This document shows, piece by piece, positions 9,361 through 11,412 of a stretch of DNA of 64,000 nucleotides. Under the pieces are notes generated by a model. It did no database searches and was not told the origin of the DNA. It saw only the letters and a list, made by a program, of their open reading frames with translations. The DNA is from Mytilus trossulus (taxonomy: Eukaryota): NCBI RefSeq assembly GCF_036588685.1, contig NC_086375.1, positions 13,826,001 through 13,890,000 of the forward strand, given 5' to 3'. The translations under genes were made by a program, and so were the position numbers. Each line of letters begins with the position of its first letter. Positions within the stretch are counted from its first letter, which is position 1.

Positions 9361-10398
9361 CAGTCTAAAAGTATTTTACTGGGGATTGTTACATGTATTT
9401 TCCATTTCTAAGCTTGAATTTTCAAGTTACCTCACAGAGTTCATAGACAAAAGGAATTTACTTCCACTTGAATCAATATTAAGTTTTCTTAAATAATTGA
9501 TCCTGTGTTCAGATATTTTAGTGAGTCCTAGCCAAACTTACTAGAGGCTCTAAAGAGCTGTACCGGTCACTTACATCTTCAACAATAGCCATTTTGTGGT
9601 AAAAATCATCATGAAAAGGCAATAGCTCTATAAAGAGTTAACTGACAATTTCAGTCATGTTGACATATATGTAGATCTTTCCCTGTTAATCATTTTTGCT
9701 ATCTAAAGTGGTTATTTTGACATGCTATTTTCAACTTAAAGGCAGTTTTCATTTCTGTATTCACTAATAATCTAGATATATATATTTATGTATAGATCCA
9801 AATATGTATCACTTTTAAATATGAATTGAATTGGAATTAATACTTTTCTTCTTCGTTATTTTGTTAGCTACACGTGTACATGTATTCTCTCATGATGTTT
9901 ATACAAAACTGATTCTAAATTAATATTTTTTAAGTGATTAATAGAAAAAAACCTGTGAAAATTGTTTTCATTTTTTGTACAAAAAGTTCTTTTAATTTGT
10001 TACAAAAACTCTCAATTTAAAAATAAATGGTAAGTACTTCAAGTACATATTAGTCAAATCAAATGTATGTTCATAAATAAACTGTTGAATCAATTACTAA
10101 AAATGAAATAAACAATTCTATTAAAGTGTCCAATATATTGGTTATTTTATAATTTCCCTGTGTACATCCCTTCCTGTCAAAATGATCATGGTAAGAATTT
10201 TCAGTTAATTCAATTGCAAATCTATTTAAATTATTAGAATTTCAATTTTTTTGAAAATTTTAGAAGGGTTATAAGGGCAGGGTTGTGTGTGACTGGGCAA
10301 ATAATTTCTTTGGATAAAATACATATCTCTTAACAAAAACTATATTTTTGTGTGGTTGGCAAAATTTTAAACAAGGATCAAAATGGAAATTATATATA

Positions 10399-10590
10399 TA
10401 GATATAGGAAGATGTGGTGTGAGTGCCAATGAGAAAACTCTCCATCCAAATAACAATTTAAAAATTAAACCATTATAGGTTAAAGTACGGCCTTCAACAC
10501 GGAGCCTTGGCTCACACCGAACAACAAGCTATTAAGGGCCCCAAAATTACTAGTGTAAAACCATTCAAACGGGAAAACCAACGGTATATA
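10399..10590 (-). mobile_element. Short interspersed repeat (retroposon 3' tail); other copies ~29687-29880 and ~62735-62955 (opposite orientation)
   Basis: GATATAGGAAGATGTGGTGTGAGTGCCAATGAG...GGAAAACCAACGGT is seen three times in the window. It interrupts the paralogous flank of the 1-2830 repeat. Confidence 0.75.
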
Positions 10591-10719
10591 TATTTTAATA
10601 TAATTATTTTCTGTGACTGTATCTTACATTAATTTGTAGGATCCTTTACTATAGATAATTTAGCTGATCTGTAACAATAACATCTTCATGCCTTATATAT
10701 CATGTACTGTAGTACGCCG

Positions 10720-10776
10720 CTAGATTAAAGCTGACGTGGAAAGGTAACATATGGCCACCGAAAGCTCTTTTTTTAG
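10720..10776 (+). ncRNA. Candidate non-canonical minimal type-I hammerhead ribozyme (second copy 11160-11216)
   Basis: Core CTGACGT (A9>U) at 10731-10737; stem II GG..GGT-loop-GCC..CC; GAAA 10760-10763; palindromic AGCT stem III; cleavage predicted after C10767. Stem I is CTAGA(TT)AAAG pairing with TTTTTTTAG. Confidence 0.5.
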
Positions 10777-10777
10777 A

Positions 10778-10872
10778 GCCCAGGTGGTCGTGTGGTCTAG
10801 CGGGACGGCTGCAGTGCAGGCGATTTGGTGTCACGATATCACAGTAGCATGGGTTCGAATCCCGGCGAGGGA
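10778..10872 (+). promoter_or_regulatory. tRNA-derived Pol III internal promoter (SINE-type head; second copy 11218-11312)
   Basis: A-box-like TGGTCGTGTGG at 10785-10795 and perfect B-box GGTTCGAATCC at 10852-10862. There is no acceptor stem, so it is not a functional tRNA. Confidence 0.7.
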
Positions 10873-11379
10873 AGAACCAAAAATTTGCGAAAGCAAATTT
10901 ACAGATCTAACATTGTTAGGTTGATGTTTAGACGAGTTGTATATACATTATGTACATAGCCATGTATCACCATCATTGATGGCGATCCGATGGATACATC
11001 TGTTGTAGGGTTGTCACTGACTCAGACGTACTTATGAATATAATTATTTTCTGTGACTGTATCTTACATTAATTTGTAGGATCCTTTACTATAGATAATT
11101 TAGCTGATCTGTAACAATAACATCTTCATGCCTTATATATCATGTACTGTAGTACGCCGCTAGATTAAAGCTGACGTGGAAAGGTAACATATGGCCACCG
11201 AAAGCTCTTTTTTTAGAGCCCAGGTGGTCGTGTGGTCTAGCGGGACGGCTGCAGTGCAGGCGATTTGGTGTCACGATATCACAGTAGCATGGGTTCGAAT
11301 CCCGGCGAGGGAAGAACCAAAAATTTGCGAAAGCAAATTTACAGATCTAACATTGTTAGGTTGATGTTTAGACGAGTTG

Positions 11380-11412
<33 letters not shown>

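What the first reader, a model, noticed from the sequence alone, without database searches (positions are those of the whole stretch)
10597..11385. 440-nt tandem unit joining a tRNA-like Pol III promoter to a non-canonical hammerhead: candidate self-transcribing retrozyme
Seen: 1.8 identical copies. In each, a hammerhead-shaped motif is followed directly by a T7 run and an A-box/B-box tRNA-like head. The motif has a 9-bp bulged stem I, CUGACGU, an interrupted stem II, GAAA, palindromic AGCU and a UC cleavage site. The two predicted cuts (after 10767 and 11207) would release a 440-nt monomer that starts just before the promoter. The array ends GTATATA inside a (TA)n tract. Known: minimal hammerheads with palindromic stem III cleave as dimers, and Schistosoma Sm-alpha is a precedent for a tRNA-related repeat with a hammerhead. 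Inference: a SINE/retrozyme hybrid carrying its own promoter, copied from circular or multimeric RNA and primed at TA microsatellites. Caveats: core position 9 is U rather than A, a competing hairpin GCTCT-T6-AGAGC covers the cut site, and an internal TTTT could stop Pol III.
Basis: partly seen in the sequence, partly recalled or inferred. Interest (0 to 1): 0.8.

Follow-up and report, generated by a model that had tools for sequence, protein, structure and literature searches.

The report
tRNA-headed tandem retroelement, hammerhead not supported
The 440-base repeat is a fresh copy of a very abundant, highly transcribed, non-coding mussel jumping element that lands in TA repeats in the manner of Penelope-like retrotransposons, and its "hammerhead" is most likely not a working ribozyme but part of a long conserved stem-loop.

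Summary
Window 10597-11385 is 1.8 units of a 440-nt repeat, 100% identical, ending in (TA)n. The letters of the hammerhead-like motif, the T7 run and the A/B boxes are as described.

The hammerhead reading is not supported.
- Rfam finds no hammerhead.
- Position 9 is U in 5,089 genomic units and A in 980.
- G8, position 9 and G12 are among the least conserved positions.
- The motif region is the least conserved part of the unit.
- Covariation supports the competing hairpin, not stem I.
- The hammerhead fold costs about 23 kcal/mol.
- RNA reads cross the predicted cut and show no pile of ends there.

The broader idea is largely supported. The unit belongs to a family of more than 6,000 units on all chromosomes. 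Arrays sit in (TA)n. Their 3' junctions fall at two AGAC-N-TAT sites, and their 5' ends are variable or inverted. A young Penelope-like element, which has a C-terminal GIY-YIG domain and lacks a hammerhead, ends in the same signal. RNA is abundant and comes from one strand.

Pol III drive and circular RNA remain unproven.

This scan already met the same family on other DNA of this genome, with the same reading.

The parts
10597..11036 (+). Unit 1 of the 440-nt repeat. Family coordinate p = window position - 10596.
   Evidence: At least 187 matches of 96-100% identity elsewhere in the genome.
11037..11385 (+). Unit 2, cut off at the 3' entry site (p349). It is 100% identical to unit 1.
10585..10593 (.). 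Left (TA)n remnant of the target microsatellite.
   Evidence: All 9 simple arrays inspected have TA repeats on both sides.
11386..11412 (.). Right (TA)n / (TATG)n tract of the target microsatellite.
10731..10767 (+). Hammerhead-like motif: CUGACGU ... GAAA AGCU C. A second copy lies at 11171-11207. It most likely does not work as a ribozyme.
   Evidence: no Rfam hit; the core is not conserved; no covariation in stem I; pair probabilities about 0.
10717..10803 (+). Long stem-loop across the unit junction, with helices of 9, 12 and 5 bp. The T-run is its apical loop. The A box lies in the 3' arm and the hammerhead-like core lies in a 22-nt internal loop. A second copy lies at 11157-11243.
   Evidence: -41.1 kcal/mol, pair probability at least 0.97; the apical helix covaries, and the other helices are 80-97% paired across subfamilies.
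10764..10779 (+). Apical hairpin GCUCU-U6-AGAGC, which has compensatory changes.
   Evidence: Pair 10767-10776: UA 34, CG 22, UG 10, none unpaired. Pair 10768-10775: UA 28, CG 23, UG 6, GC 4. 0 of 500 shuffles reach the observed score.
10768..10774 (+). T7 run. It is T5-T8 in other subfamilies. It is transcribed through in RNA-seq.
   Evidence: depths of 435 and 371 across the two copies, and no ends piled there.
10778..10876 (+). tRNA-Glu-derived head, with the A box at 10793-10803 and the B box at 10851-10861. It does not fold as a tRNA.
   Evidence: blocks TGTGGTCTAG and GGGTTCGAWTCCCGGC are shared with a genuine mussel tRNA-Glu(UUC) gene. ARAGORN and Rfam do not call it a tRNA.
10881..10900 (+). 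Hairpin AAAUUUGC-GAAA-GCAAAUUU. The stem is kept in older copies while the loop varies (GAAA, UUCC, UUCU).
10930..10945 (+). 3' entry signal 1, AGACGAGUUGUAUAUA, the main array end at p349. The copy at 11370-11385 is where this array ends.
   Evidence: 36 of 66 array 3' ends fall at p347-371.
11024..11035 (+). 3' entry signal 2, AGACGUACUUAU (p428-439), the second hot spot for array ends.
   Evidence: 19 of 66 array 3' ends fall at p433-440.
11180..11180 (+). One-sided pile of RNA fragment ends, equivalent to 10740 in unit 1. It lies 27 nt upstream of the predicted hammerhead cut. Unexplained.
   Evidence: 255 of 1186 and 291 of 1448 molecules end here. Depth falls from 1317 to 455.

Best explanation
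The stretch is a very recent 1.8-unit insertion of an abundant, non-coding, tRNA-Glu-headed tandem retroelement of a mussel genome.

Likely mechanism:
1. A plus-strand RNA longer than one unit, either multimeric or circular, serves as the template.
2. A Penelope-like element (PLE) supplies the reverse transcriptase and GIY-YIG endonuclease, and the endonuclease nicks a (TA)n microsatellite.
3. The freed TA end pairs with the UAU(A) that follows one of two AGAC motifs in the RNA (p334-349 or p428-439) and primes cDNA synthesis.
4. Synthesis runs over one to many units and stops at a random point. This gives the fixed 3' junction, the variable 5' end and the occasional inverted 5' pieces.

The hammerhead-shaped motif is not a working ribozyme in this family. 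It lies in the internal loop and 5' arm of a long conserved stem-loop that spans the unit junction, with the T-run as its loop.

Shown here:
- the family structure and the junction statistics
- the covariation of the hairpin
- the abundant one-strand RNA that reads through the unit junction
- the existence of a young PLE that ends in the same signal

Inferred, not shown:
- that this PLE is the mobiliser
- that the tRNA-like head drives transcription
- whether the template is circular or multimeric
For: Family:
- At least 187 scored matches on many contigs, in arrays of 2 to more than 13 units.
- 5,089 plus 980 exact copies of a 20-mer from the unit.
- Older subfamilies of 75-93% identity are also tandem.
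- Young arrays are nearly homogeneous, with 0-6 differences per 440 nt. Old arrays have decayed in place, with about 50-60 differences.

Insertion polarity:
- 55 of 66 array 3' ends fall at two sites, while 5' starts fall at 53 different positions.
- The unit has exactly two AGAC motifs. Both are followed by TAT within 9 nt, and they are the two hot spots.
- An equally long TATATA at p98-103 is used only once.
- TA repeats flank all 9 simple arrays on both sides.
- Head-to-head inverted 5' pieces occur.
- These are the published PLE hallmarks: 5' truncation, partial tandems, an inverted 5' copy and a (TA)n bias (PMC8557442).

Partner candidate:
- It has a partial tandem copy upstream.
- At least 584 candidate copies were seen at first look, and the 40 scored are 97-100% identical.
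- All reach the TA run and end ...TTTATAGACTTTTATAT(TA)n.
- Inverted pieces end at an internal TTTAGACTGATATA.

Plus-strand RNA:
- First mates lie 50-100 times more often on the minus strand.
- There are 620-810 reads per million.
- The variation in the hairpin goes through U-G pairs, which are only possible on the plus strand.
- The plus strand folds with z = -5.4 against -2.9 for the minus strand.

Against a working hammerhead: and (no ends at 10767/8 or 11207/8).
Against: - No target-site duplication can be read in (TA)n.
- The partner link rests on a short shared motif (AGAC, 3-8 nt, TAT) and on the shared target, not on extended homology. An N-terminal-endonuclease (Naiad-type) PLE family also exists in the genome and was not excluded.
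- Pol III drive is doubtful. Reads cross the T7 run at about half the full depth, no 5' ends pile up at the head, and no ends lie in the T-run.
- The library's strand convention is assumed, not verified.
- The one-sided RNA end at 10740/11180 is not explained by the model.
- Rfam missed another dimer-type hammerhead in L039, so its silence weighs little against a minimal PLE-type hammerhead.
- 980 units, some of them young, carry the canonical CUGACGA.
Confidence: 0.7

Rival explanations
1. A Pol III-driven retrozyme whose minimal hammerhead has a palindromic AGCU helix III and is active as a dimer. It would cut after 10767 and 11207 and release a 440-nt monomer that is then circularised and reverse-transcribed.
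For: - The motif is rare by chance, about 0.13 expected per 64 kb.
- It shares traits of published PLE 'min-HHRs': a G10.1-C11.1 pair, palindromic 15.2-16.2, a short helix I and a tandem context (PMC4209133).
- 8 of 66 sampled copies and 980 genomic units carry the full canonical core with A9.
- Rfam can miss dimer-type hammerheads here.
- Cyclic 471-nt (440+31) contigs occur in two metatranscriptomes.
Against: - U9 occurs in 5,089 units against A9 in 980, so spread does not need A9.
- G8, position 9, G12 and A13 vary more than the free N7.
- The motif region is the least conserved part of the unit, at 0.69-0.84 against about 0.9.
- Stem I does not covary, and its two core-proximal pairs are broken in 31 and 40 of 66 copies. 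Position 1.1 covaries with the hairpin partner instead.
- Helix II is only 2+2 bp, against 6-8 bp in min-HHRs.
- The hammerhead helices have a pair probability of about 0, and forcing them costs 22.8 kcal/mol.
- No fragment ends lie at the predicted cut, and reads span it.
Confidence: 0.08
2. The motif is a decayed relic of a PLE-type minimal hammerhead. An ancestor of the family would have carried it, and its core is now drifting because propagation no longer needs it.
For: - The right order of the core halves, with A9 kept in a minority of units including older subfamilies.
- The family rides on PLE machinery, and PLEs and animal retrozymes usually carry hammerheads (PMC4209133, PMC7229834 and the 2026 preprint 10.64898/2026.07.22.740005).
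- The chance expectation for the motif is low.
Against: - No copy or subfamily with a convincing helix I or II was found.
- No Rfam hit in A9 copies.
- The candidate partner PLE has no hammerhead of its own.
- The alignment of the unit to the canonical mussel retrozyme is not significant, with 80 of 500 shuffles scoring as high.
Confidence: 0.2
3. DNA-level spread of a satellite. Broken, fragile (TA)n tracts would be repaired by copying from other arrays through TATA microhomology, or by re-integration of extrachromosomal circular DNA. No RNA would be involved.
For: - (TA)n tracts are fragile.
- The junctions show TA microhomology.
- Palindromic head-to-head and tail-to-tail junctions occur.
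- Arrays are tandem like satellites.
Against: - The polarity is strict. 3' ends are fixed and 5' ends free, with no mirror class.
- Junctions need AGAC upstream of TAT. The equally good TATATA at p98-103 is used 1 time in 66.
- The same signal and target are used by a reverse-transcriptase-encoding PLE.
- The structure is conserved in a plus-strand-specific way, and the RNA is abundant and one-stranded.
Confidence: 0.07
4. An ordinary LINE-mobilised tRNA SINE whose tandem arrays arose afterwards by unequal crossing-over.
For: - A tRNA-derived head with A and B boxes.
- A microsatellite at the 3' end.
- Tandem-like SINE structures are reported in bivalves (PMC11481361).
Against: - Arrays begin at any unit position and end at the entry signal, so they were inserted as multimers.
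- There are no TSD-bounded monomers between units.
- Young arrays, this one included, are homogeneous at birth.
- No LINE-like tail is present, whereas the PLE hallmarks are.
Confidence: 0.04

Closest known systems
Animal non-LTR retrozymes (Cervera & de la Pena 2020, PMC7229834; mussel repeats of about 350-390 bp with type I hammerheads)
   Same: Short, non-coding units arranged in tandem and dispersed over the genome. They are highly expressed and are thought to ride on Penelope-like elements. They occur in the same host, and a canonical copy lies next to one array (L047:973-1016).
   Different: There is no canonical or conserved hammerhead. A tRNA-derived head with A and B boxes is present instead. 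The unit is 440 nt. Circular RNA has not been shown.
Penelope-like elements: Neptune, Penelope and Naiad clades (Craig et al. 2021, PMC8557442)
   Same: The insertion footprint matches: strong 5' truncation, partial tandems, inverted 5' copies and a preference for (TA)n. A young PLE of this genome ends in the same AGAC-N-TAT(TA)n signal.
   Different: The unit encodes nothing, with at most 68 codons open in any frame. It would be a passenger, not a PLE.
tRNA-derived SINEs
   Same: The head is derived from a tRNA (here tRNA-Glu-like) and has A and B boxes. The element is short, non-coding and non-autonomous, and ends in a microsatellite.
   Different: It inserts as multi-unit arrays with circularly permuted starts. 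The likely partner is a PLE, not a LINE. Pol III transcription is unproven, and the T7 run is read through.
Schistosoma Sm-alpha and newt satellite 2
   Same: Tandem or SINE-like repeats with a small-RNA-type promoter region and a hammerhead-shaped motif that has a short palindromic helix III.
   Different: Those hammerheads have a canonical conserved core and cleave in vitro. Here the core drifts and the fold is excluded.
PLE 'min-HHR' motifs (Cervera & de la Pena 2014, PMC4209133)
   Same: Core halves in the right order, a G10.1-C11.1 pair, palindromic 15.2-16.2, a short helix I and a tandem PLE-related context.
   Different: Position 9 is U in 84% of units. Helix II is 2+2 bp rather than 6-8 bp. 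The family shows no covariation in helices I and II.

Membership tests
Hammerhead ribozyme (type I, including dimeric and minimal forms) | Conserved catalytic core C3 U4 G5 A6 N7 G8 A9 ... G12 A13 A14, with A15.1-U16.1 and H17 | tested here: not met
   The window copy has U at position 9 (10737). Among 66 distinct copies the counts are position 9 T50/A16, G8 G53/A10/T3, G12 G57/A8 and N7 C65. Genome-wide, U9 occurs 5,089 times and A9 980 times.
Hammerhead ribozyme (type I, including dimeric and minimal forms) | Helices I and II supported by pairing and covariation across the family | tested here: not met
   The covariation score of 0.022 equals the shuffle mean. Pairs 2.1-1.1 and 2.2-1.2 are unpaired in 31 and 40 of 66 copies. 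Helix II is 2+2 bp and invariant.
Hammerhead ribozyme (type I, including dimeric and minimal forms) | Match to the curated covariance models (Rfam RF00163, RF00008, RF02275-7) | tested here: not met
   No hit at E<=10 in 201 nt or in 3 kb, and none at E<=5 in A9 copies. Caveat: Rfam also missed another dimer-type motif.
Hammerhead ribozyme (type I, including dimeric and minimal forms) | Self-cleavage at H17 | tested here: inconclusive
   In two stranded RNA-seq runs there is no pile of fragment ends at 10767/8 or 11207/8, and reads span the site. Cleavage in vitro was not tested.
Non-LTR retrozyme | Dispersed short tandem repeats, non-coding and abundantly transcribed | tested here: met
Non-LTR retrozyme | One self-cleaving hammerhead per unit | tested here: not met
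   See the hammerhead rows above.
Non-LTR retrozyme | Unit-length circular RNA | not testable with these tools
   Cyclic 471-nt (440+31) contigs and junction-spanning reads fit multimers as well as circles.
tRNA-derived SINE | 5' head derived from a tRNA, with A and B boxes | tested here: met
   The blocks TGTGGTCTAG and GGGTTCGAWTCCCGGC are shared, in order, with a genuine mussel tRNA-Glu(UUC). The head is not a foldable tRNA.
tRNA-derived SINE | Transcription by Pol III from the internal promoter, ending at a T-run | tested here: inconclusive
   The RNA is abundant and one-stranded. However, reads cross the T7 run, no 5' ends pile up at the head, and there is no drop at the internal TTTT. 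How RNA was selected for these libraries is unknown.
tRNA-derived SINE | Single-unit insertions with a LINE-derived tail and target-site duplications | tested here: not met
   Insertions are multi-unit arrays with permuted starts. No LINE tail is present. Target-site duplications cannot be read in (TA)n.
Passenger (non-autonomous element) of a Penelope-like retrotransposon | PLE insertion footprint: 5' truncation, partial tandems, inverted 5' copies and a microsatellite target | tested here: met
   compared with PMC8557442.
Passenger (non-autonomous element) of a Penelope-like retrotransposon | 3' end shared with an autonomous PLE of the same genome | tested here: met
   Only a short signal is shared. 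The unit has AGACGAGTTGTATATA and AGACGTACTTAT. The PLE has TAGACTTTTATAT(TA)n and TTTAGACTGATATA. There is no extended homology.
Passenger (non-autonomous element) of a Penelope-like retrotransposon | Mobilisation in trans by the PLE protein | not testable with these tools
   This needs a retrotransposition assay.

The most novel reading that the evidence does not exclude
The family is a retrozyme-like, possibly circular RNA retroelement that replaced ribozyme processing with a tRNA-type Pol III module. It would make unit-length, end-paired RNAs without any self-cleavage and be copied by rolling reverse transcription by a hammerhead-less Penelope-like element. Alternatively, in the A9-bearing minority, it would still use a minimal dimeric hammerhead. 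Either way it would be the first tRNA-promoter-bearing passenger of Penelope-like elements, and a natural experiment on whether hammerheads are needed for retrozyme spread.
Probability: 0.2. Interest if true: 0.85.

Novelty: new variant of a known kind. Interest (0 to 1): 0.55.

Why it matters
Animal retrozymes and Penelope-like elements are defined in part by their hammerheads, and the role of those ribozymes in the transposition cycle is unknown. Here a family with more than 6,000 units uses the same targets and leaves the same footprint, but it has a drifting, non-folding hammerhead look-alike and a tRNA-derived head. This suggests that the ribozyme is dispensable for copying, and that a short signal (AGAC, a few bases, UAU) next to a TA primer may be what the reverse transcriptase needs. 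That is a concrete, mutable handle on the poorly understood Penelope insertion mechanism. For annotation, such arrays should not be filed as plain satellites or as ordinary SINEs.

Tried and rejected
- TRF found nothing because there are fewer than 2 copies. The repeat finder and a direct offset test settled the repeat.
- Rfam was run on 3 kb, on 201 nt, on the whole window and on eight loci with older copies. It gave no hammerhead, tRNA or other ribozyme for this unit. I first took this as strong evidence. I downgraded it after my own scan found a good dimer-type hammerhead in L039 that Rfam had not reported.
- I tested a hammerhead with the covarying hairpin as helix III. It was rejected because position 16.1 is C in all copies and no helix I adjoins the core.
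- I tested whether the 3' entry region (UUGAUG...UAGACGAG...GUAUAUAC) is a relic of the canonical mussel retrozyme hammerhead. The local alignment is not significant, with 80 of 500 shuffles scoring as high.
- I fetched the 1056-aa GIY-YIG family as a possible partner. It has an N-terminal endonuclease (Naiad type), the fetched copy does not end in (TA)n, and it shows no similarity to the unit.
I then fetched only short stretches.
- I considered a poly(A) site at 10740, since AUUAAA lies 11 nt upstream and the U-run 28 nt downstream. If the library's first mate is sense, I also considered a minus-strand start site 28-35 nt downstream of an A7 TATA-like box.
Full report
**1. The observation**

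Window 10597-11036 and 11037-11385 are direct repeats at a spacing of 440, identical at every one of 349 positions. TRF did not list them because there are fewer than two copies.

The array is preceded by GTATATATAT (10584-10593). It ends ...GAGTTGTATATA and then runs into (TA)n.

- CUGACGU at 10731-10737
- GAAA at 10760-10763
- AGCU at 10763-10766
- C at 10767
- T7 at 10768-10774
- A box TGGTCTAGCGG at 10793-10803
- B box GGTTCGAATCC at 10851-10861

It is therefore not common, but it is not surprising across many windows.

The unit has no open frame longer than 68 codons, even when read through concatenated units.

**2. It is one copy of a large dispersed family**

The window's own genome is 1.3 Gb in 541 contigs, and earlier notes of this scan call it a mussel. 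It holds at least 187 scored matches of 96-100% identity on many contigs, in arrays of 2 to more than 13 units. A 20-mer from the unit occurs 5,089 times in the U9 form and 980 times in the A9 form.

Older subfamilies of 75-93% identity are tandem too, with the same period.

Young arrays are almost homogeneous, with 0-6 differences per unit. Old arrays have decayed in place, with about 50-60 differences between neighbouring units. Arrays are therefore born as multi-unit insertions and then age.

Runs labelled with three species hold the sequence, and so do two metatranscriptomes.

**3. How the arrays sit in the genome**

All nine simple arrays I read have TA repeats on both sides.

Of 66 array 3' ends, 36 lie at p347-371 and 19 at p433-440, where p is the window position minus 10596. 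The 63 5' starts are spread over 53 positions.

The unit contains exactly two AGAC tetramers, at p334 and p428. Each is followed by TAT within 9 nt, and these are the two hot spots. The equally long TATATA at p98-103 is used only once. TA microhomology alone therefore does not explain the junctions. An AGAC-spacer-TAT signal does.

Several arrays carry an inverted, 5'-truncated piece at the 5' end. Many TA tracts hold two copies tail to tail.

Strict polarity with a fixed 3' end and a free 5' end argues for a single-stranded polar template. It argues against DNA repair copying, which should give the mirror class as well.

Craig et al. 2021 describe exactly this footprint for Penelope-like elements: strong 5' truncation, partial tandems, an adjacent inverted 5'-truncated copy, and a (TA)n bias in Naiad and Neptune-type elements (PMC8557442).

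**4. A candidate partner**

[quoted passage not shown] A Cys-rich linker lies upstream of the GIY-YIG domain (C11:60586970-60589703, L065+L063).

It has the partial tandem copy typical of PLEs. At least 584 candidate copies of its 3' UTR were seen at first look. The 40 scored are 97-100% identical, and all reach the TA run.

It ends ...TTTATAGACTTTTATAT(TA)n. Inverted pieces next to several copies end at an internal TTTAGACTGATATA. This is the same AGAC-spacer-TATA arrangement as at the two junction sites of the 440-nt unit.

This PLE has no hammerhead by Rfam or by a CUGANGA...GAA scan.

A second family of 1056 aa has an N-terminal endonuclease (Naiad type). It shows no similarity to the unit, and the copy I fetched does not end in (TA)n. 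It is not excluded as a mobiliser.

The partner link is an inference from a short shared signal and a shared target.

**5. The hammerhead**

*Sequence models.*
- Rfam reports no hammerhead for the window copy at E<=10, even when only 201 nt are searched.
- It reports none for older copies with CUGACGA.
- It did find a canonical type I hammerhead of a different element beside one array (L047:973-1016, 32.5 bits).
- It missed another dimer-type motif in L039, so this line is weak on its own.

*Conservation.* Among 66 distinct copies, the essential G8, position 9, G12 and A13 vary:
- G8: G53, A10, T3
- position 9: T50, A16
- G12: G57, A8
- the free N7, by contrast, is C in 65

The motif region is the least conserved part of the whole unit. 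Identity of old copies to the window is 0.84, 0.80 and 0.69 in the three 20-nt windows p121-180, against about 0.9 elsewhere.

Genome-wide, U9 outnumbers A9 five to one, and both forms sit in young arrays. In RNA about 9-12% of reads carry A9.

Its two pairs next to the core are broken in 31 and 40 of 66 copies.

The competing hairpin GCUCU-U6-AGAGC has compensatory changes:
- pair 10767-10776: U-A 34, C-G 22, U-G 10, none unpaired
- pair 10768-10775: U-A 28, C-G 23, U-G 6, G-C 4
- 0 of 500 shuffles reach the observed score

Position 1.1 of the supposed hammerhead therefore covaries with its hairpin partner, not with position 2.1.

*Energy.* Window 10712-10806 folds into one long hairpin of -41.1 kcal/mol with helices of 9, 12 and 5 bp.
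- The T-run is its apical loop.
- The A-box region forms its 3' arm.
- CUGACGUGGAAAGG lies in an internal loop.
- The hammerhead helices alone score +2.9 kcal/mol.
- The best fold forced to contain them is 22.8 kcal/mol worse.
- Their pair probabilities are about 0.
- The two longer helices are 80-97% paired across subfamilies, with U-G to C-G changes.

*RNA.* In two stranded raw-read runs no fragment ends pile up at 10767/8 or 11207/8, and reads span both sites at depths of 435 and 371.

*Verdict on the hammerhead.* I put a working hammerhead in this family at about 8%, and a decayed relic of a PLE-type minimal hammerhead at about 20%. The traits it shares with the min-HHRs of Cervera and de la Pena 2014 are the G10.1-C11.1 pair, palindromic 15.2-16.2, a short helix I and a PLE-related tandem context. 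These, and the 980 A9 units, keep the question from being closed without a cleavage assay.

**6. The head**

ARAGORN and Rfam do not call a tRNA in this copy or in any older one.

A genuine tRNA-Glu(UUC) gene of the same genome (L066) shares two blocks with the head, in the right order: TGTGGTCTAG in the D-arm and A-box region, and GGGTTCGAWTCCCGGC in the T arm and B box. The anticodon region is replaced by about 45 unrelated bases.

The head is therefore tRNA-derived. Whether it is a working promoter was not shown.

**7. RNA**

The two raw-read runs give 620-810 reads per million on the stretch. First mates lie on the minus strand 50-100 times more often than on the plus strand. With the usual library type this means plus-strand RNA.

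Independent support for the plus strand:
- the structure variation goes through U-G pairs, which would be C-A mismatches on the other strand
- the plus strand folds far better than its shuffles, z = -5.4 against -2.9 for the minus strand
- the insertion polarity requires a plus-strand template

Summed over the two copies, coverage goes all round the unit. It passes the unit junction, the T7 run and the internal TTTT. The RNA seen is therefore longer than one unit, or circular. Two metatranscriptome contigs of 471 nt (440+31) fit either form.

No 5' ends pile up at the head, and no ends lie in the T-run. This does not fit simple Pol III start-and-stop. The selection used for these libraries is unknown.

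**8. Unexplained**

A one-sided pile of fragment ends lies at 11180 (equivalent to 10740). It holds 255 of 1186 and 291 of 1448 molecules, depth falls there from 1317 to 455, and there is no matching pile on the other side.

It lies in the internal loop of the long hairpin, 27 nt upstream of the predicted cut. Candidate explanations:
- a poly(A) site, since AUUAAA at 10724-10729 lies 11 nt upstream and the U-run 28 nt downstream
- an endonuclease cut whose 30-nt product is too short for the library
- if the first mate is sense, a minus-strand start 28-35 nt downstream of an A7 TATA-like box

Part of the fall in depth may come from the 95% identity filter. The expressed copies differ from the window at 10730, 10750, 10754 and 10774, and by one extra T.

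**9. Comparison and novelty**

The element works like an animal non-LTR retrozyme in that it is a tandem, non-coding, highly expressed PLE passenger (PMC7229834; preprint 10.64898/2026.07.22.740005). It fails that family's defining feature, a hammerhead.

It looks like a tRNA SINE at its head. It fails on single-unit insertion and on LINE partnership.

I found no paper describing a tRNA-headed PLE passenger. The bivalve SINE survey reports tandem-like SINE structures, but not this family or a PLE link (PMC11481361).

Earlier agents of this scan reached the same reading on other copies of this family. I used their notes as leads and tested the (TA)n footprint, the shared 3' signal and the lack of a ribozyme myself.

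Noticed in passing
window 10391-10585: Another abundant repeat (GGAAGATGTGGTGTGAGTGCCAATGAGAAAACTCTCCATCC...) lies directly upstream of the array and is itself bounded by TA-rich sequence. RNA reads cover it on both strands. In other copies it continues ...ACGGTCTAATCTATATAAAAAAAAAG. Related copies sit just after the (TA)n of the PLE (L063:730 onward) and in L062:2240-2400.
   Followed up: partly
G000:C5:45717747-45967089 (L066 is one copy): A tandem array of well over 70 near-identical tRNA-Glu(UUC) genes, with a period of about 1.44 kb.
   Followed up: partly
L047:611-1016 (+), next to an old array of the family: A canonical mussel hammerhead retrozyme with a 362-bp period. Rfam Hammerhead_1 scores 32.5 bits at 973-1016, just under the gathering score of 34. 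It ends ...GACGAAACGCGCGTCTGGCGTATATAC, which again places AGAC and TATATAC near the ribozyme.
   Followed up: partly
L039 minus strand, starting at about 2944 and 2377: A third hammerhead-like motif, CTGAAGAGACATTCATTGTCGAAATCCGGATC, with a palindromic AUCCGGAU helix III and a spacing of 567 bp. Rfam did not report it at E<=5.
   Followed up: no
G000:C10:30946589-30954640 (L061, L062) and many other loci: A young PLE family with an N-terminal GIY-YIG domain (Naiad type) and a 1056-aa ORF, often found as tandem copies 4.28 kb apart.
   Followed up: partly
window 10730 and 11170: The window copy has G just before CUGA, where 64 of 66 distinct genomic copies and practically all RNA reads have A. 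The window array is therefore a slightly atypical member and probably not a source of the RNA seen.
   Followed up: yes
window 10734-10789 and 11174-11229: A few RNA reads (3-6) skip 54 nt between CTGA|CG and GT|GGTCG. This removes the hammerhead-like motif, the T-run and the start of the head. It is probably a deletion variant among genomic copies.
   Followed up: no
window 11180 (equivalent to 10740): A one-sided pile of RNA fragment ends in the internal loop of the junction stem-loop. AUUAAA lies 11 nt upstream and the U-run 28 nt downstream.
   Followed up: partly
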